Assembly: GCA_024626585.2 (NCBI GenBank)
Contig: JANKJI020000002.1
Span: forward strand, 271,250,313 to 271,277,642
DNA from: Ginkgo biloba
Taxonomy: Eukaryota > Plantae > Ginkgophyta
Length of the DNA: 27,330 nt
Direction of reading: 5' to 3'
This document shows positions 749-22,314 of the stretch, one piece after another (positions within the stretch are counted from its first letter, which is position 1; the number at the start of each line of letters is the position of its first letter). The position numbers and the translations under genes were made by a program. The notes under the pieces were generated by a model. It worked only from the letters and a program-made list of their open reading frames with translations. It did not search any database and was not told where the DNA came from.

Positions 749-1356
749 ATGGCTGCGCTAAACGGATTCTGTCCAAGAACAAAGGTATCGCCGCGTTTTC
801 TGCTTTTATATATTGTGTTTGATTTCGAGAGAGTCGAGAATAAATCGTATATAACATGCATGAGAGTCACATTTGGAAATTGTTTTTATTTATATAACAT
901 CCCTCTAGAATCTAGATATAGAGTAGCTACTCAAGGACGTGCATCTTAATTTTAATATATTGAGATTGGTTAGAATTCTAGCAATACTCTACTATATTGG
1001 TTCAGCTGTGACGAAGCCTTTATACAAATACGCTTTTCATTCTGTGAGCAGACATTAATATATAAATTGAATATATTACCCGAAAAACTTGTACACGATA
1101 ATTTTGATAGTAGCTATTTGTTGTGTACACGATAATTACTGGCTTTTTCGGCGCAGCTTTGAGCTTGGGAGTGAAAGTGGACGCCGTGGACCAGTATCAT
1201 GAACGAATTGATGAAGTTAGCCTACGACCGACAAGTGGAAATGGAATTGGACGACCAAAATCGTTCAGACAAAGAAATATGAAACCCAAAATGCACTGCA
1301 AAAGACAGATTCCTGGAGGACCTGATCCTCAACACCACGCCGGCAAGGGAAATTAA
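749..1356 (+). CDS. CLE: CLE (CLAVATA3/ESR-related) peptide precursor; proposed exons 749..784 + 1114..1356 (92 aa)
   Basis: The ORF ends ...KRQIPGGPDPQHHAGKGN*. RQIPGGPDPQHH (1303..1338) fits the 12-aa R-type CLE motif (cf. Arabidopsis CLE2 RLSPGGPDPQHH, CLE5/6 RVSPGGPDPQHH). The hydrophobic stretch LFVVYTIITGFFGAALS resembles a signal-peptide h-region. Exon 1 (ATG749, AAG|GTATCG donor at 785, phase 0) is inferred. The CLE identity of 1114..1356 is much more certain than the 5' exon. Confidence 0.8.
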
Positions 1357-5779: not shown

Positions 5780-6360
5780 AAATATATTATATCTTTAAGT
5801 ATTATGAATTGATTAGATTTTTAAATTCCTATCCATCAAGGGTAGCAATGCGGTAGGCTTCATTCTATAAATCTTTGAGAATGATGACTGGGCCTAACCA
5901 TTTTTGGATGAACGTTCCTTTTTTATCAAATAAGTAATCCAATTTCAAGACCTTGTCTCCTACTAGGAATTTTTTATACTTCACCTTTTTCTCGTAGATG
6001 ATATGACTCTAATTTTTATAGTCCTCTAAGTGTTGGCAGGTGAGGAGTCTCTTTTCATAGAGTTTCTCAAATTCTGTTAGTTGAGAGGCTTTAAGTCCTT
6101 CGTAATCCATCCAATTTTGAGTTGAAATTTTGAGAGAAGGAATCTCAATTTCGAGGGGGGGAATGTATTTTTTCCCATAAACTAGTGAGAAGGGAGTCAT
6201 CCCAGTAGGAGTTTGGATGGAAGTTTGGTATGCCCACAAAGAAGAAAATATTTTCAAATTCCATGATAAATGGATTGGTTAATGGTTCACTTCAAGACAT
6301 GGACCAAGGTCTTATTAAAATCCTCAGATTACCTATTGGATTGAAGGTAGTATAGAGTGT
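5780..6360 (-). mobile_element. Ty3/gypsy (Tat/Ogre-like) integrase remnant
   Basis: Translation gives YYLQSNR*SEDFNKTLVHVLK (cf. YYPQGNGQAEAxNKT) and LWAYQTSIQTPTGMTPFSLVYG..PPLEIEIPSLK, then KKVKYKKFLVGDKVLK...KWLGPVII...AYRIATLDG...YLK (GPY/F module). In-frame stops are present. Confidence 0.92.
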
Positions 6361-9207: not shown

Positions 9208-9645
9208 TGCACCCAATGGCATATCACTTGATCCCCCTATATAAATTAGTGGTCCATGTTACTTGTTACTCCCTAAGTGGTAATACCCACTCCTATGCGG
9301 ATGTATCTAATCTACTATTTATTTTTTTATGGTATTACCTTCTTCTTTATCCCATTACAAAAAAATATACATGGGGATCCTTTGATTAGGATGGTAAAGT
9401 ATAATTATGATTCCATGGTGAATACTTGATAGTAAAATTCTTATTCCCCTTAGGCACCTTATGAAAATTCCTTATTTTGTATAAAATAACATCTTGATCA
9501 TACAAGTATGGGATCCCAAAGACTAAAATAACACAATCAATCATAAATACATCACATGTAAACTTATTAATAAAGAAATATGTAATAAAAATTTTTACCT
9601 TACACTAATCAATTATTATAAACTTAGATTATTTATCCAACCAAC
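9208..9645 (-). mobile_element. Ty3/gypsy aspartic protease remnant (copy 1; same family as 21179..21760)
   Basis: Near-colinear DNA match to 21179..21648. It encodes WLDK...CKV...VTCDV...LGIPYLYDQD-type motifs. Confidence 0.8.
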
Positions 9646-11099: not shown

Positions 11100-13135
11100 C
11101 AGGTAATTATGGGAATATTTTAGATGTCTACAATCACTATATTTCTATATAAAAGGCAAGGGTTTCATCCCTAGATCGTAGGTCTTAGCCTTGCGAAAGT
11201 ACTAACTGAAGAGTTTAACCATCGCTTAAAATTTTGACATAGAATAGGCAAGTAAATGATGAAACCATTTTAAAGATTTCCTCTTGAGAGAACAAGGGAA
11301 CATTTATTATAAATTTATTTTGAGCAAGTCTTAGAATAATCATCGATGTTTGCAGTAGGTTCACTCCTTGGGCAACCAAAAAAATGAGGAAACTCAAGAA
11401 GAGGATATGGAAATACCACCAATTGGATTATGTTACTTAAAGGGGTTGACATGTAATAAGTATAAGACTTCTTAAGAGGAGATATAGGTTTCACGAACAT
11501 ACTCTAGCTTATAGGATGAGGAGGAGGTATCACAACTATAGATGAACTTGTGATAAACGTGTAAGGTGGTTTAAGAACATAGTGGAGGTTGGGCATATTA
11601 AACCAAACTTAGGACCTACTTAAAAAGTTGTGTGAATGATGGAACAATGGGATATGAAGGCCCAAATTCATATGTAGGAAAGAAAAAAGGATATGGATAA
11701 GGATATTGATATGGGCTCCTGAATAATTGATCAAAGTGTTGAAATAATAGGGATGTGGCCAAGGGGGTTTGTTGCATCCCAGAAGAAACAAACGACCTTA
11801 TAATAGGATGGGATGAGCCCACAAGAACCCCAAGGTAAGGTGATACTAAACTAAAAGGGGTTACATTTAGCACTATAGGCAGTTGAACTATATGTGGAAT
11901 TTATCAAGAGGTACCTATATGTGGAGTTGATTGAGAGGGACCCATATATTTATTAAAAATGAGCATGGGATGCAGGTGGTGTAGAGCCACCTCGGATGTG
12001 GATCCCAATCAATATGGGATATGCTTCATAAGGAATGAAGAGTAACCATTGGAATCAACACTAGGAAACAAATATGGTCCCTCCACCTTATTATAGTGAG
12101 GTAGATTAACTGCCAAGGAAGAATGGGTGTCCACCTCAAAATGAGGGAATGCATGAGGAAACTCAAAAGACATAATCGGTGTATTAGGTTTAGAATGATG
12201 ACCTCTCGTGGGAGCTTGTAAGTGAGTAGGATTCTTAGAGGGTAGGACCTAAAGTATGCGTGACTAACAAACCTCATAGTTAAGGGGATTAGTATGTGGG
12301 TGAGACTCCATAGTGACAAGTGTCAAAGTGAGGATATTTATGTAAAATAAAAATTAAAAAGGTGAAGGGGATAGAATACCCTTCACTAAGATATCCTAAG
12401 AAAGTTCAACTAGGCAATTCATTGTAAATTATAGGAAGTATAAAAATAGGAAGATCTTGACTAAAATAGACAAGCAACTATGATAATCATCACTTGACTA
12501 CCTTACAAAATATGCGAGTAATACCTAAGATTCTAAGCTACCACACCCAAAATTAAGGTACTACACTGTTGAGGTGGTTTCCCCTAACATGTGTCATAAC
12601 CCAACCATAAAATTCTAATATAAACTTAAAGTAAAACTCTTAGGTGTTGGAGGAAGTAGAGACTCTAGTGCCCCTAGGGATAATGAGGATTCCTATGGGC
12701 CTCATAAAGGGATATTAGTGATGTGTGAACATCACTAATGATCCTTAGAGGACATGAATAGAGCCATCTTAGGCCACCAACATGAGCAACAAATTCTACA
12801 CTCCCTAGATGTATCTCATACCTTTTCTCCCAGGAATCACCCAAAGGAACAAGGTTCAGTAACAATTTCATAAGGATTTATAAAAATGGGTCCCCAAAAG
12901 GGAGAAAAGAAACACCTAACAATACCCTTCCTCAATAGTATTCATCTCTAATTGGCTAGGGGAAGAAAAACTAAAGGGTCCCTACTAGAATAGGGGGACT
13001 TAGTCCTAATAATGCAATACCAAGATTCAAATTTTAGATTTAACACCAAAGAACTTAGGATATACCTATAGACTTGAGTAAGACCTAATGTAGAATAAGG
13101 GAAATGGAAAGGTAGAGGTAGACTGTGACCTTGAC
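11100..13135 (-). mobile_element. Decayed internal region (5' leader/gag/protease) of a Tat/Ogre-like LTR retrotransposon
   Basis: It lies downstream of a PBS-like motif at 13136..13152. TLINYSGAHINIL at about 11.7 kb resembles the LIDSGAxINIL protease active-site motif. The region is CpG-depleted. Boundaries are approximate. Confidence 0.45.
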
Positions 13136-13152
13136 TCCCTAGTAAGTCACCA
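13136..13152 (-). other. Degenerate primer-binding site (Ogre/Tat-type TGGCGAC..CTGGGGA)
   Basis: The minus strand reads TGGTGACTTACTAGGGA, preceded by a short T spacer and a decayed LTR end (plus-strand TATA at 13157, expected TGTA). Several differences are transitions of the deamination type. Confidence 0.5.
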
Positions 13153-15108
13153 AAAATATACGAAAGAGTATGGTTTCCCTCAGTGTGTAATCTAATGGGT
13201 CGACCCAATCATAGATAAGGGTAATTACACCCTATACACACTGTAATGCACGTGATCATGTGCAATTGTGTGCAAAAAAAAATGTAAGTCAACATGAATG
13301 AATGCAAAATAGATAAAACTTACAACATATGCTTGCAAAAAATAAAGTTATTTACTCTAATTCAAAGCATTCTTTCATTTCAATAGTCAATACGCCACAC
13401 ATTGGCCTTCACAAATGTATACACAACATAATTATTTATGTTCTCTCCATGTCAAAAGATCTAAACCTTTCCTCTTTCTTTCCCTTTTTTATTTTCAATG
13501 AATTCAAATATGTAAACAAGCAAAAGACACCCAAAACCCAAACAATCTTAATTTAGGATAGGAAATAGAGATTACACTAACAATATGGAAGCAAGAAATA
13601 ATTCTTCTAAAGAGATCTGGAAAAGAATGGTTTGACCCAAAAGAGACAATAAAGGGAGAAAATAATCCTTATATGAAAGGGGAGCCTCAATTGCAATGCG
13701 AGTGTATCATAAAAGAGGCCGAAGGGGTTAGCTAAAAATTAGATTGAAAAATCTATTTTTTAGGCACAACTTAAATGTCAAAATGAAATAAATAGGAGTG
13801 ACCTTTCCTTTTGCTTTTTTATACCAATGAAAAATAGATTGAAATGAAATTATAAAATTGAAATATAATCTTGGAAGGGCATGCGATTGTGTCAAGAATA
13901 GAGAAAGAGGTGACCATGAAGATAGTTTCTCTTTTCTAAGTGGACTTTGTTGACAAATAAGGATAGCAATGGGGGATGAAATTCGGTGAGTAATTATATT
14001 ACATTCCAATGAATTTGTAATGGGGACACCTACCGGTTACTGAAGGAAACCCTAACCAGGACCCTAATAGGAAAATATTTATAGAATGGAAGGATGAAAA
14101 CCAAAAATAGTAGAGAATTCAAGTTCTAGCTCAAATTTAAATTTAACTACTTTTCATATTCCAATTTTATTTTAAACTAAGAAAAGAGCACAAATTGAAT
14201 TTAAAATGATCAAACCTCAGTTTATGAGAAAATGGCATATTGTAAGTTGATCAAACAAGCTCAAAAAGTCCTATCGATCCTCCTGTGGGCTTCCTCCTTT
14301 ACTTTGAATCTAGCATCACAATCCAAAGGTGGAGATACGACCATCAAGCTCATGGAAATCCTTCAACATGCTAGTTAAAGTATTTGACAAAATTATGAAC
14401 AAGAGTTCAAGGAAAGAATAAAGGACTTCACAACATAAATAGACCTAGGAGAGATTACAACAAGATAGGAAACACAAAATTGAGGAAGAGTAGAGGGTAG
14501 GGGATAGAAAATTAGTCAAAAACTACTATAATAGAGCCTATGGATGTGCTTCCAAAGAAATTTTGAAAATATAACCTTACATGAACCAATTGCCTCTTTT
14601 TGAAAATATAACTCATTAGACTCGTACAAATAATTATATATCCAAGCTGTTGAAATTAGAAATTGGTAAAATGAACAAGGAACCACACAAATTGATTGGG
14701 TTTGCCAGAGTACATTGGTGAAATTGCTGCACAAATGTTGTTTCAATAATGTTGGAGTGGTAGTTTTCCATATATTACTTAGATGATTGGCATTTCATAT
14801 ATTTATAATTAGATTTTATGTAGTAATTAATTATAAGATATTACATAGTGGTAGAAGAGATCAAAATGGCACTTTTATCACTATTTTTGTATATATTGTA
14901 ACTCACATTGTACTTAATAACAAACAAAGGCATTCTTTATGTATCATTTATGTGTATACATTTTGTAACTACCTTGTGTTTTATTGAACAGTCATTTTAA
15001 AATTTATTTTTACGTTATCACATATATTGTACAACATTTCCAATGAATGTGCGACTGTGAGTTAAATAAAAAGAAATAAGATAGGAGTCAGAAAATCATA
15101 ACGTGGCT

Positions 15109-15192
15109 ATTTATTATAAATGTTGGAGCAGAGTAGAATTGCCACGTCGAATTTATTATAAATGTTGGAGTAGAGGAGAATTGCCACGTCGA
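15109..15192. repeat. 42-bp tandem repeat x2, each unit with TTATAAAT and GCCACGTC
   Basis: ATTTATTATAAATGTTGGAG(C/T)AGAG(T/G)AGAATTGCCACGTCGA at 15109..15150 and 15151..15192, with 2 mismatches. Confidence 0.95.
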
Positions 15193-15272
15193 CATTTTAT
15201 CATGGATGTGTTTGATTTGATGGCACATAACATATCAATCACAAGGGAGATGAGTGTGCGTGTTTCCACATC

Positions 15273-15346
15273 TGCGCCCTTCAACTTGCAACACGCGGCA
15301 CCGTGCAGTTGGCACCGGTGCCGCGTTCTGCAAGTTGAAGGCCGCA
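15273..15346. other. 74-nt GC-rich inverted repeat / hairpin
   Basis: TGCGCCCTTCAACTTGCA pairs with TGCAAGTTGAAGGCCGCA (1 mismatch). ACGCGGCACCG pairs with CGGTGCCGCGT. A 2x2 internal loop separates the two helices and the terminal loop is short. Confidence 0.9.
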
Positions 15347-15611
15347 TAGTTCTGTAAGTTTGACTACGCTGTGATTCCTTGGGGATATGCAGAGGTGGAG
15401 GTGGAGGTGGAAGTGGTAGCAGAACTTACCAAATGAGAGAGCTAGAGCAACCAGCCAAAGTATATCGGATCGGAGGAGTCGGACCCACCTAAACCTAGGC
15501 AAATTGCAAATACAATATCACGCTTTTTCATAAATATAGAACATGTCAGCCTTTCCATAAATGAAAAATCGGAATTTTATACGCTTTTTCATAAATATAG
15601 AACATATAAGC

Positions 15612-15666
15612 ACCCGCCAATTTTGAATCAAAAATTTCAATTTTCAATTTTTTTGCTTTGGCGGGT
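15612..15666. promoter_or_regulatory. Inverted pair of E2F-consensus sites (WTTSSCGS) upstream of the H3-like gene
   Basis: CCGCCAAT at 15614..15621 (ATTGGCGG on the minus strand) and TTTGGCGG at 15657..15664, about 105-155 bp upstream of ATG15770. Confidence 0.55.
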
Positions 15667-15769
15667 AGCTTTTTTGTATTTATACACACTTTTGCATTCG
15701 TGTATTCACACCTCTTTGGCAGTCGGCATTTGTATTCGTGTATTGACACCTCTTTGGCAGTCGTCAGTC

Positions 15770-16292
15770 ATGGCACCAGTTCCCGCTAAAAAACAGTCCA
15801 GGAGACATTGGGCCGCAGCGTATTTATATACTATTCCTTCTTTTTTGTTTTTTTGGCAATTAATGGCATTTGTTATTTAAGTGGCACTGACAATGCTCTG
15901 ATTTTCTTTGTTTTTTTTTTTTATTATTATATGCAGAGAAGTTAAATATTACCGAAATACCACACATAGGCTGATTCCCGCCCTCCCCTTTCGGAGGATT
16001 GTGAGGGAAATTGCACATGTAAGTTTAAATATGACAGTTAGTTATTGCAAATGAAATTGTTTTTGTTTTTGTTTTTTATTGATAATGTTGTGATAATTGT
16101 GTCTCTATGCAGCCTCACATTCGATTCAGTGCTGATGCGTTTGAGGCTCTGCAAGAAATTGCAGAGTGTTATTTGGTAAATTATTTTGAGGGGGCCGAGC
16201 ATCTCCAAAAACATGCTAGAAGGAATACTTTAACCGTAGAGGATACCAGATGCTTACGATTTCTTATAAGCTTAATTAAGTCTGATCTTTAG
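15770..16292 (+). CDS. Divergent histone H3/CENH3-like protein, 103 aa; exons 15770..15819, 15937..16018, 16113..16292
   Basis: Spliced translation: MAPVPAKKQSRRHWAAAEVKYYRNTTHRLIPALPFRRIVREIAHPHIRFSADAFEALQEIAECYLVNYFEGAEHLQKHARRNTLTVEDTRCLRFLISLIKSDL*. H3 histone-fold motifs LIxxLPFxRxVREI, RF, ALQExAExYLVxxFE and HARRxTxxxxD are present. The two T-rich GT-AG introns (15820..15936 phase 2; 16019..16112 phase 0, GTAAGT...TGCAG) keep the frame open. Confidence 0.88.
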
Positions 16293-16458
16293 TATTGTAT
16301 TTGTCCCTCTTTTTTATTATGTAAATTTTTGTTTAAGGAGACGTACGTTCCATACTGCAAAATAAATAAAATATATCTCATTTTTTATGCCAAGGATATG
16401 ATTTATTTAGTTTGGTGAGAGCATGTTGCAGAGATCTTTATATGAATATATCATTGCT

Positions 16459-17155
16459 TTGGGGTTGTGTTCTGTAATGGTCATTTATATGAAGAATGGT
16501 CTGCAGCTTTAATGAATGAAATATTTGTTACTAGTAATTCAAATTTCTTTCTTGTGTTGTGTTGTGTGAGTATGAATCAAAAATACAAATTATATTTTTA
16601 TTGATTTCGCAAATTATATTTTCTTTCTAGTATCTTAGTCCATTAGGCCATAGACTATCCTTGAAAATATAATCCACCTATGCACTAGTAGGAAAAAACT
16701 AAATGACTGCAGTCCACTTGGCATTGATTGATCGCCCGAAACAGACAGCAATTACTTACATTTCTTTCTAAACATAGTTATTTACATACAGCAATTATTT
16801 ACATTTCTTTCTAAACACAAATTACTTATATTATTTCATTGGCGTTGTGTTGTGTAATGGTCATTTATATGGACAATAGTCTGAAGCTTTAATTACGAGT
16901 AATTCAAATTTAAGTCTTTTAAATTTAATTCTTTGTGTTTGTGTTATGTGAGTATGAATCAAAAATACAAATTAGATTTTTATAGATTTTGAANNNNNNN
17001 NNNNNNNNAGTATCTTAGGCCATAGCCTATCCTTGAAAATATAGTCCACCTATGTACTAGTGGGAAAAACTAAATGACTGCAGTTCACTTGCCATTGATT
17101 GATCGCGCGAGACAGACAGCAATTACATACATTTCTTTCTAAACATAGTTATTTA
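16459..17155. repeat. Tandem duplication with a period of about 380 bp (16459..~16784 and 16839..~17155)
   Basis: Shared blocks include TGTAATGGTCATTTATATG, GTGAGTATGAATCAAAAATACAAATTA, CTATCCTTGAAAATATA, AAAAACTAAATGACTGCAGT and CATTGATTGATCGC. Confidence 0.92.
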
Positions 17156-18536
17156 TGCATTCTAGAAAAAGACAAATTTTGGGGTGTTACAAAGTAGATT
17201 ATTAATAGAAAATGTCTCTATTCTAACATTTCTTTCTTGTCTCGTAATTACAAGGTAGATTTTATCAGGGAAAGTGAGAATGAGAATGAAGCACCTGGTA
17301 TTCAAACTGACTTCAACTTTTATTAAGATGATATCATTGGTAGGCTGTAGATTCGGCAATTAACAGAATTCGATAGTTACTATAGACAGTGGGTCATATC
17401 CCTTGTTTTAAAATTTCATTAAATATTCAACAAAGAGAAAGAGACTCGTAGAAGTCAACTCAGGATTTAAAGGCCTTAATAAGTGTAAGAAATTAATAAT
17501 CAGTGAAGATAATGTAAATGTCATTTGAAATCATTGAAGAAAACAAGACTAGTTACAGATTTCATGAAGAATGTAAACATTTTTTTAATCTTTGTTTAAT
17601 ATAGTGAAGATTGCCAAGATTGATGAAAATTTGAAGAAATGTCCTTTAGAAAAAGCTTGTTCTTACTCATTTTAATTATCTATGGCATGACAATTGGTGT
17701 TTTGTGTATTGTAATGGAGCTTGTTCTTATTGATGTTAATTATTTATGGTGAATTGTGGTAGGAAGTTTTTTAGCCATTTATTTTGATTTGTTTTAATCT
17801 ATTATTTCATAAGGGGATGATAAGAGGAGAAGACAATTATAAATAAAACATTGATTCCATTGGGAAAGAGTCACGTATAAGTCTACATCATTAAGCCTTT
17901 GTATAGATGAATTGAATTTGATTTGTACTATTCACTTACATGCAATTTTTATAATTCTTATAAATCTTGATTAGAATTCTCAAAAAGAAGTAGAGAATTG
18001 TTAGAATCTCATGGATTTAAGTGTTCAAGAGAGTAGTGGGAAGTCATTTTATTTAGCCATTCAATGATAATCAAGCCCAAATCCTTCAATCTTTCACTTT
18101 TTAAAATACGATTTTCACTTATGCTCATCTTTTTATTTGTATAGTTTATATAACACATTGTTATAATTATCTATCCTTGCAAAATCATTCTAAAGACTCA
18201 AAATTCAAATTAGAATGTCCTATAATATAATAGTCTCCTACATGTTTTAATACATTACAAAATACACAATAAATAAGATATGCAATCTTAACCCTTGTTT
18301 CAAATTACATCCTCATAATAAATTTGGATCTATTTGAGCTTTAATTTGTAGTGGTGCAAGTGATGGTGTAGTTCTTTCCACTTTCACTCTTTTCTCTTGC
18401 TTTTGCTACTATGTTTTCTAAATAGTGCTACAAAAAACGAATATACTTATTTGTTCAACTTGAGAGTTCACATTCTTGAAAACTTTAAAAATCTTTTGTT
18501 AAATATCTCTCATTTTGACATGGGGATGTTAAAATA

Positions 18537-21178: not shown

Positions 21179-22314
21179 GCACCTAATGGAATATCACTTT
21201 ATCCCCTCTTAAAAATTAGTGGTCCATGTTACTTGTTACTTCCTAAGTTGGTAATGTGTATAAATTTATATTTAGGATGATGCCTCATAATACCCTCTCC
21301 TATGTGGCTGTATCTGATCTACTATTTATTTTTTTATGGTATTACCTTCTTCTTTATCCTACTACAAAAAACTATACATGGGGATCCTTTGATTGGGATG
21401 GTAGAGTATAAGTATGATTCCATGGTGAATACTTGATAGTAAAATGTTTATTCCCCTCAGGCACCTTATGACAATTCCTTATTTTGTATAAAATAACATC
21501 TTGATCATACAAGTATGGGATCCCAAGGAGCATACTAGCATAATCAATTTGAATAACATAACATGTAACTTCATCAATAAAGGAATGTATAATGGAAAAT
21601 ATTACCTTGCATTGATCAATCATTATGAAATTATACACTTTATCCAACCAATAAATCTCATAGAGTTCTATATGAAGGAATGTTTCAAGTTTAAAATACT
21701 TGACTAAGGACTATGTAAGTAAGATCTCTTGGTTGCATGTGTTGAATAAGATAGATATAATTTATTTCTTGAATTAGATTATTACATGAAATAACTCTTT
21801 ATACTACTTAACCATCAATGGGATTACCTTCACAAATAAATTTATGTAGAGATCTAGCTAGTATCTAATGAATATCCAATATTGGTATATTTTTCTCTTG
21901 TTCTTATTGAATGGTAAATATTTTGGTGTTATTCTTAGACTAGCAGTTATCATAAACATAACATTTAACTTTGAAAAAACTATAATAATCCTTTATATCA
22001 TATCCTCTTATGCCCTTAATTATGTATTTTCTATTAGGAAGGTGATTTTACCTCCTATTTCTTCTCCTCCTTTTATAAAATCTTTCTCCTAGCCCTTGTC
22101 TCAATATTTTGAGAAAATTATAAACTTTATCAAAGGTGAGAATTTCAAATAGTTTAAACTCATGTTGAATATTGGTGTATAGTCCTCTTATTAACTTCAA
22201 GACTATTTTATATTTATCTTCTTATACATTAAGCTTGATTTCTAACTTGTGAAAAGCATATATATATTATTCCATATTTTGGTTCTTTTCTTATTTTAAT
22301 TGTTAACACCTTTT
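21179..22314 (-). mobile_element. Ty3/gypsy gag-protease remnant (copy 2)
   Basis: Translation gives LFNTCNQEILLT*SLVKYFKLETFLH..YEIYWLDK...DQCKVIFSI..FIDEVTCYVIQIDYASMLLGIPYLYDQD (retropepsin). The upstream part is presumed gag by position only. Confidence 0.8.

What the first reader, a model, noticed from the sequence alone, without database searches (positions are those of the whole stretch)
15770..16292. Hidden three-exon gene for a tail-less, highly divergent histone H3 variant
Seen: an open 103-aa spliced frame with phase-compatible GT-AG introns amid DNA where the recognisable TE coding remnants are broken. Only 17 residues precede the E50-equivalent, versus 49 in mature H3, so K4, K9, K14 and K27 have no counterpart; MAPVPAKK resembles the SAP...KK (28-37) segment. 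By my alignment the core lysines are also gone (K56>N, K64>A, K79 in the deleted loop, K115>R, K122>E), while structural residues F67, R72, R83, F84, E97, Y99, H113, R116, T118 and D123 are kept. Inference: a nearly modification-free H3 variant (germline-specific, anti-silencing or chaperone-decoy), distinct from H3.1/H3.3 and typical CENH3. Caveat: a longer N-terminus from upstream exons spliced to the AG at 15760 (in frame, adding SSV before the Met) cannot be excluded.
Basis: partly seen in the sequence, partly recalled or inferred. Interest (0 to 1): 0.85.

Follow-up and report, generated by a model that had tools for sequence, protein, structure and literature searches.

The report
Tail-less, H3.3-derived plant histone variant
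A land-plant genome carries a spliced, transcribed gene for a 103-residue histone H3 relative that has lost most of the tail where chromatin marks are normally written but kept its structural core, so it may be a new, loosely wrapping histone variant; the protein and its role have not yet been shown.

Summary
The three-exon, 103-codon gene is real. Intron 2 is spliced in assembled transcripts of three studies and intron 1 in two; contigs run unspliced through the AG at 15760, so no upstream tail exon is seen (contigs cannot prove a start). Its two introns match plant H3.3 introns 2 and 3 (R49 phase 2; K79|T80), not angiosperm CENH3 introns, so it is most likely an H3.3 duplicate that lost the first exon. 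The fold is 43% identical to H3.3, but retained residues sit at constrained sites (23/31 against 12.8 under neutral decay), and the locus is not CpG-depleted, unlike its transposon flanks. That points to selection on a protein. DNA-end residues 49, 53 and 56 are neutral, loop 1 is three residues short, and chaperone-selecting residues 87-90 are changed. Best reading: a low-abundance variant making loose, largely unmarkable nucleosomes. Tissue, protein and chromatin incorporation are untested. No orthologue was found. 'Nearly modification-free' is overstated (five lysines remain), and the claimed tail resemblance is not significant. It is a new, extreme member of the plant H3-like class. The scan noted it only on this same DNA.

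The parts
15677..15684 (+). TATA-like box about 45 nt upstream of the 5'-most transcript contig
   Evidence: contig starts 15729 and 15734; function inferred
15729..15769 (+). observed part of the 5' UTR, unspliced across the AG at 15759-15760; no ATG between 15600 and 15769
   Evidence: (X13 record 1, X15 record 6)
15770..15819 (+). coding exon 1: start codon (G at -3 and +4), 16 codons + 2 nt; short basic N-terminus and start of alphaN
15820..15936 (+). intron 1, 117 nt, GT..AG, phase 2 in the R49-equivalent codon (plant H3.3 intron 2); partly retained
15937..16018 (+). exon 2, 82 nt (91 nt in H3.3): H3 positions 50-76, alphaN-alpha1; D77-F78-K79 missing
16019..16112 (+). intron 2, 94 nt, GT..AG, phase 0 before the T80-equivalent (plant H3.3 intron 3)
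   Evidence: joint in X13, X15 and X18
16113..16292 (+). exon 3: H3 positions 80-138, loop 1 end, alpha2, loop 2 and a lengthened hydrophobic alpha3; stop codon
16293..16366 (+). 3' UTR (seen to 16355) and AATAAA at 16361
15000..17250 (.). island without CpG depletion (o/e 0.5-1.0) around the gene, inside CpG-depleted transposon DNA (0.1-0.3)

Best explanation
A DNA-level duplicate of a plant H3.3 gene lost its first coding exon and most of the second, began at a new start codon about 33 residues into the H3 sequence, and then diverged fast while selection kept the histone fold. SHOWN: gene structure, splicing, H3.3 intron positions, constrained-site conservation, low-level transcription. INFERRED: the protein pairs with H4 (the alpha1, alpha2 and loop 2 core is kept, including L61, I62, F67, R83, F84, L92, Y99, F104, R116 and T118). 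It can still close an H3-H3' bundle (H113 and D123 kept; 110, 126, 127 and 130 remain hydrophobic but are changed, so self-pairing may be favoured). It enters chromatin in a restricted cell type through a non-standard chaperone route (87-90 is neither the H3.1 nor the H3.3 motif; K122E, Q125R and R129F alter the surface that I recall binds ASF1). The resulting nucleosomes would have loose DNA ends, because positions 49, 53 and 56 are all neutral and net charge is about +6 against +20. They could not carry K4, K9, K14 or K27 marks. It would thus act as a mark-erasing or chromatin-loosening replacement histone, as proposed for reproductive H3 variants. About 0.8 that it is a selected H3.3-derived coding gene; about 0.45 for the whole nucleosomal mechanism.
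For: Splicing in 3 studies and read-through of AG 15760. Intron positions identical to H3.3 of Vigna, Arabidopsis lyrata and Taraxacum and unlike CENH3 of Arabidopsis and Trifolium. 23 of 31 highly constrained sites kept against 12.8 in 20,000 neutral simulations (none reached it), and only 3.7% of those stayed free of stops. Exon 3 alone against plant CENH3 conservation: 0 of 5000; exon 2 alone p 0.03-0.14. Exons are GC-richer than introns, and the locus is not CpG-depleted. Loss of R49/R53-type contacts loosens DNA ends in tested nucleosomes (PMC4365049; PMC8855299). The mouse variant H3mm18 shares a neutral 53, I124T and an aromatic 129, and still enters chromatin at low efficiency. K27-immune H3.10 and H3.15 are plant precedents (PMC8566409, PMC10426802).
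Against: No protein, tissue or localisation data. Expression is low (contig depth 3-10), intron 1 is often retained, and one polyA run gave 0 reads in 1,174 million letters. No orthologue was found, so dN/dS could not be computed. Several constrained sites did change (A95I, D106G, L109H, V117N, L126C, R129F), and the three-residue deletion at the end of alpha1 may prevent a normal nucleosome. Lily gcH3 and leH3, which have fold deletions, are judged probably non-functional (PMC3380720). The conservation signal could reflect past rather than present selection.
Confidence: 0.45

Rival explanations
1. A functional but non-nucleosomal histone-fold protein. It dimerises with H4 or another histone-fold partner and acts as a chaperone sink or as a subunit of another complex; the long hydrophobic alpha3 is a new binding surface.
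For: Selection on the fold core but loss of DNA-end, tail and chaperone-code residues. Exon 3 is net acidic (-2). Alpha3 is predicted to be 17 residues long with a hydrophobic end. The loop 2/alpha3 motif has moved toward generic histone folds (weak CENP-T, TAF and CENP-S Pfam hits). Non-nucleosomal roles were suggested for lily gcH3 and leH3.
Against: The DNA-contacting arginines R69, R72, R83, R116 and T118 and the H113-D123 pair are all kept, which nucleosome-like DNA binding would need. A predicted alphaN segment is retained.
Confidence: 0.25
2. A once-functional variant now relaxed from selection: a transcribed pseudogene whose frame is not yet broken.
For: Low expression, intron 1 retention leading to an early stop, a weak intron 1 donor, the only coding difference seen is non-synonymous, no orthologue found, and changed residues are no more conservative than neutral (mean BLOSUM p 0.33). 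TE-associated gene duplication and pseudogenes, including a TE-captured histone H3, are reported in gymnosperm genomes (PMC13477047).
Against: Open frame and four intact splice sites at 57% divergence (3.7% stop-free under neutrality, before counting frameshifts); non-random retention of constrained sites; start context, TATA-like box, polyA signal; promoter not CpG-depleted; words held by 8 small runs in 7 studies.
Confidence: 0.17
3. A CENH3 paralogue, or an H3.3 derivative that converged on a centromeric role.
For: At sites where plant CENH3 and H3.3 differ, it follows CENH3 at 7 (R63P, K64A, T80P, S86A, K115R, I119L, I130L), H3.3 at 4 and neither at 10. Q68 and T107 are replaced, R49 is lost and the C-terminus is hydrophobic. 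The exon-3 tree cannot reject a place beside CENH3 (p-AU 0.15).
Against: Loop 1 is three residues shorter, whereas CENH3 has a longer one (PMC4770206). F84 is kept. The tail is short, not long. None of the three CENH3 fold introns (L70|V71, E94|A95, M120) is present, while two H3.3 positions are. Unrelated divergent H3s show the same CENH3-like residues. Gymnosperm CENH3 gene structures were not available to test.
Confidence: 0.1
4. A member of an old, deeply conserved divergent-H3 family shared with microbial eukaryotes (P0042, P0022, P0024), or a TE- or virus-borne histone.
For: Those proteins share a striking loop 2/alpha3 motif with exon 3 (13 of 20 identical by eye, against 6 for H3), and exon 3 groups with them and P0007 in one tree (96/97).
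Against: All are long branches. Their genes have a long lysine-rich tail exon, other intron positions and a long C-terminal exon, and overall identity is 36-39%. No relative in viral or metagenome contigs. No terminal repeats enclose the gene.
Confidence: 0.03

Closest known systems
Plant histone H3.3 (Arabidopsis HTR4/5/8 type)
   Same: Introns at R49 phase 2 and before T80; histone fold; polyA-type, intron-bearing replacement-gene layout.
   Different: First intron, first exon and about 32 tail residues absent; 43% fold identity; H87D and L90E; D77-K79 deleted.
Plant 'H3-like' class (Cui et al. 2015, PMC4357034)
   Same: Defined by absence or degeneration of the N-terminal part, deviation at 31/41/87/90, with or without introns.
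   Different: A catch-all class. This member has transcript and selection evidence and is very divergent in the fold; no sequence-level relative was found.
Lilium generative-cell H3 variants gH3, gcH3, leH3
   Same: Lineage-specific, highly divergent plant H3s; gcH3 and leH3 have fold deletions (PMC3380720).
   Different: Their sequences were not compared here; male-germline expression is not shown for this gene; separate origin presumed.
Arabidopsis H3.10 (sperm) and H3.15 (wound/callus)
   Same: Atypical H3 variants that escape K27 methylation; H3.10 keeps the H3.3-type H87 and L90.
   Different: By my recollection they keep a full-length tail and a near-canonical fold; this protein deletes the tail outright.
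Mouse H3mm18
   Same: H3.3-related variant with neutral 53, I124T and aromatic 129; unstable nucleosomes with disordered DNA ends.
   Different: Animal and convergent; H3mm18 loses R72 and R83, which are kept here.
Plant CENH3
   Same: Divergent N-terminus; R63P, K64A, K115R, I119L; Q68 and T107 replaced.
   Different: Loop 1 shorter not longer, F84 kept, short tail, different introns.

Membership tests
Histone H3 family | H3-type histone fold with alphaN | tested here: met
   Pfam PF00125 above cut-off for exon 3; exon 2 matches H3 50-75; AF2 model of exon 3 superposes on H3 and CENP-A chains
Plant H3.3 | Introns at the conserved H3.3 positions | tested here: met
   2 of 3 positions match; the third lies in the missing tail
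Plant H3.3 | T31-Y41-H87-L90 signature | tested here: not met
   H87D and L90E; 31 and 41 not alignable
Plant H3.3 | Conserved 135-residue sequence with full tail | tested here: not met
   103 aa; 34 of 79 fold positions identical
Plant H3.1 | Intronless gene with A31-F41-S87-A90 | tested here: not met
   two spliced introns; D87 and E90
CENH3 | Loop 1 longer than in canonical H3 | tested here: not met
   three residues shorter (criterion in PMC4770206)
CENH3 | Non-canonical, usually extended N-terminal tail | tested here: inconclusive
   non-canonical but only 17 residues before E50
CENH3 | Plant CENH3 fold residues (W84; Q68, T107 and K115 replaced) | tested here: inconclusive
   F84 kept; 7 CENH3-like, 4 H3.3-like and 10 other residues
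CENH3 | Angiosperm CENH3 fold introns (L70|V71, E94|A95, M120) | tested here: not met
   none present; gymnosperm and fern CENH3 not tested
CENH3 | Phylogenetic grouping with CENH3 | tested here: inconclusive
   exon-3 branch saturated
CENH3 | Centromere localisation | not testable with these tools
   needs a tag or antibody
Plant H3-like class | Absent or degenerate N-terminus, off-consensus at 31/41/87/90 | tested here: met
Generative-cell or sperm H3 variants | Male-germline-specific expression and chromatin incorporation | not testable with these tools
   sample names are coded
TE-captured or viral histone | Enclosed by terminal repeats, multicopy, or with viral relatives | tested here: not met
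   no enclosing repeats, one copy in the window, no viral hit, not CpG-depleted; genome-wide copy number not tested

The most novel reading that the evidence does not exclude
A naturally tail-less H3 variant, kept by selection in a gymnosperm-like plant, that forms its own homotypic (H3*-H4)2 nucleosomes in a specific cell type such as the male germline. It would erase K4, K9, K27 and possibly K36 memory simply by having no tail, rather than by point substitution as in H3.10 or H3.15.
Probability: 0.3. Interest if true: 0.85.

Novelty: new variant of a known kind. Interest (0 to 1): 0.55.

Why it matters
H3 is among the most conserved proteins known, and its tail carries the main epigenetic marks. 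The functional plant variants I found described change a few residues. A selected, expressed H3 that lacks about 32 tail residues, has a shortened loop 1 and has neutral DNA-end contacts would be a natural test of what a nucleosome can do without an H3 tail. It would also give a candidate for epigenetic resetting in non-flowering seed plants: in cycad sperm the most sperm-specific histone reported was an H2A, not an H3 (PMC12849711). If it proves non-nucleosomal, it still shows how a core histone can be co-opted.

Tried and rejected
Upstream tail exon: no H3 1-23 or 1-49 similarity above background in six frames of the window; a short frame at 15433-15492 with a faint tail-like look has no RNA depth. 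The idea that AG 15760 is the dead acceptor of H3.3 intron 1 fits the frame and distance, but neither protein nor DNA alignment supports it; left unproven. Orthologue searches were blank: exon 3 by word index (33-103 aa only), by phmmer on 1.84 billion representatives (best identities 33-57%), with a 137-aa scaffold alignment to widen the length range, in the Atlas (generic histone clusters, at most 0.89), and in viral and metagenome contigs. Exon 2 was too short for the locus scan. Trees on exon 3 alone were dominated by long-branch effects: with other divergent H3s both canonical and CENH3 placements were rejected, without them neither was. Rosa H3.3-signature genes and the Closterium H3 fetched for intron mapping were intronless. 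Rfam found nothing in the window. Literature searches found no description of such a variant in gymnosperms, but the library lacks most subscription papers. The species was not identified. Following the operators' rule, the joined 103-aa protein was not searched, folded or placed in a tree; all searches went exon by exon. In one local simulation the positions of exons 2 and 3 were pooled for counting, and the test was repeated per exon.

Full report
Observation. The model is exact. Exon 1 is 15770-15819, intron 1 15820-15936 (GT..AG, phase 2), exon 2 15937-16018, intron 2 16019-16112 (GT..AG, phase 0) and exon 3 16113-16292, together 103 codons without a stop. Exon 3 passes the Pfam Histone cut-off (39.8 bits, E 6e-10), exon 2 matches the same family weakly, and both match H3 and CENP-A chains in the PDB. 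An AlphaFold model of exon 3 alone gives alpha2 (7-34) and a long alpha3 (42-58) at pLDDT 95 and superposes on H3 and CENP-A (TM about 0.8-0.9, Foldseek E above 0.001); the model leans on an alignment of H3 relatives.

Transcription. Twenty public runs from 12 studies of one organism hold the stretch. Eight small runs from seven studies hold 36-61% of its words, about what exons alone would give. Three were laid. Intron 2 is cut out exactly in X13, X15 and X18, and intron 1 in X13 and X15, which shows these are RNA. Contigs that retain intron 1 also occur at similar depth (3-3.4 against 3.9-6.8); retention ends the frame after 36 codons. The 5'-most contigs begin at 15729 and 15734 and pass the AG at 15760 unspliced. 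X13 and X15 have no partly fitting record and no depth upstream to 13200. There is no ATG between 15600 and 15769, a TATA-like box lies at 15677, and AATAAA lies at 16361 just beyond the last contig base. So the short N-terminus is the only form seen, though contigs cannot prove a start. One polyA run from the same study as X13 gave no read in the 6% read, which suggests low or tissue-limited expression but is not a controlled test. All three RNA runs carry G at 16207 (Q111R).

Origin. The window is plant DNA: a broken frame at 6009-6257, which I read as a retroelement integrase piece, lies nearest to Atlas clusters whose few named members are Streptophyta, and other scan notes call the genome gymnosperm-like (unchecked beyond this). 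I mapped introns on real loci. H3.3 genes of Vigna, Arabidopsis lyrata and Taraxacum have introns at K23|A24, in R49 (phase 2) and at K79|T80. The window gene has the second and third exactly, and its middle exon is 82 nt instead of 91, which accounts for the loss of D77-F78-K79. CENH3 genes of Arabidopsis and Trifolium have fold introns at L70|V71, E94|A95 and M120, none of which is present. The R49 position alone is older (a Coccomyxa H3-like gene has it), so it is the pair that points to H3.3. Gymnosperm CENH3 structure was not available. Protein trees on exon 3 are saturated and cannot place the gene. Residues are a mosaic: 7 CENH3-like, 4 H3.3-like and 10 unique at diagnostic sites, but CENH3-like residues also appear in unrelated divergent H3s, so I give the introns more weight. 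Exon 1 shows no significant similarity to the H3 tail; whether its two lysines are K36 and K37 is open.

Selection. Without an orthologue, dN/dS is not available. As a substitute, an H3.3 coding sequence was mutated neutrally down to the observed identity (34 of 79). Only 3.7% of runs stayed stop-free, and they kept on average 12.8 of 31 highly constrained sites, against 23 observed (0 of 20,000). The reference set there had been retrieved partly with exon 3, so I repeated the test per exon and with named plant CENH3s only: exon 3 0 of 5000, exon 2 p 0.14 (0.03 with the full set). Identity by codon position is 41, 50 and 24 of 79, but third positions would be saturated anyway. Exons are GC-richer than introns, and 15.0-17.2 kb is not CpG-depleted, whereas the flanks are (0.1-0.3), so the locus has probably escaped methylation for a long time. 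Selection on a folded protein is therefore likely, though it could have ended recently.

Mechanism. The H4-facing core, the inner DNA contacts (R69, R72, R83, R116, T118) and the H113-D123 pair are kept. The tail, the DNA-end contacts 49, 53 and 56 (A, Y, N; partly offset by K52 and R55), R63-K64, the chaperone-selecting 87-90 segment and much of the alpha3 surface are changed. Net charge falls to about +6 from +20, and 5 lysines remain of 14. Published work shows that R49 and R53 hold nucleosome DNA ends (PMC4365049), and that H3mm18, with neutral 53, I124T and aromatic 129, forms unstable nucleosomes (PMC8855299). HIRA reads H87 and L90 in plants (PMC10426802). I therefore infer a low-abundance replacement histone that makes loose nucleosomes unable to carry K4, K9, K14 or K27 marks (0.45). 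Rivals are a non-nucleosomal H4-binding or decoy protein (0.25), a relaxed transcribed pseudogene (0.17), a centromeric role (0.10) and an old or mobile family (0.03). Translation, H4 binding, chromatin entry and tissue are all inferred.

Comparison and novelty. It belongs to the H3 family and fits the plant 'H3-like' class as defined in PMC4357034. It descends from H3.3 but fails the H3.3 signature, and it fails the CENH3 loop 1 and intron tests. It would work like lily generative-cell H3s, Arabidopsis H3.10 and H3.15 or mouse H3mm18, but membership in any germline class could not be tested; lily variants with fold deletions are thought probably non-functional (PMC3380720). No close relative was found in any collection searched, and no paper found describes it. 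Verdict: a real gene and a new, extreme variant of a known kind; interest 0.55.

Noticed in passing
window 15273-15346: Near-perfect palindrome about 420 nt upstream of the start codon (31-bp arms, -56 kcal/mol, z -8). Its left arm also occurs, about 90% alike, in other contigs of run X18 (one at depth 165), so it is a repeated element. No Rfam match.
   Followed up: partly
window 15109-15197: Two 42-bp tandem copies, each with TATAAA and a CCACGTC core that recalls the plant histone-promoter hexamer or G-box (from memory).
   Followed up: no
window 15691-15766: Two 38-bp tandem copies spanning the presumed start site and 5' UTR; this duplicates the AG (15722 and 15760). An X18 contig matches 15676-15724 with 4 differences and then runs on unlike, hinting at a related sequence elsewhere.
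   Followed up: no
window 16447-17155: Tandem duplication of about 375 bp just downstream of the gene, across a 15-N gap.
   Followed up: no
window 16207 and 15874: A>G (Q111R) in all three RNA runs, and T>A in intron 1 in two; several DNA runs hold 0.96 of the words, which fits one variant site.
   Followed up: partly
window 1123-1230: Short frame that looks from memory like a piece of an OSCA/CSC1 channel gene, in a second region without CpG depletion (1-2300, o/e 1.08); no Pfam hit.
   Followed up: partly
window 6009-6257 (-), 11100-13200, 9209-9580 and 21179-21587: Broken retroelement-like remnants and a 300-370 bp repeat present twice 12 kb apart; 17 assembly gaps in the window.
   Followed up: no
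L001 2611-3541; L011 3593-4757 (P0042, P0022, P0024, P0047): A family of very divergent, intron-bearing H3-like genes from microbial-eukaryote metagenomes, with a long lysine-rich N-terminal exon and a long charged C-terminal exon, each head-to-head with a large gene of no known family. They share a loop 2/alpha3 motif with the window protein.
   Followed up: partly
L003 501-908 and 4104-4514: Two tandem Rosa chinensis genes with the H3.3 signature but no introns, an exception to the rule that plant H3.3 genes have introns.
   Followed up: no
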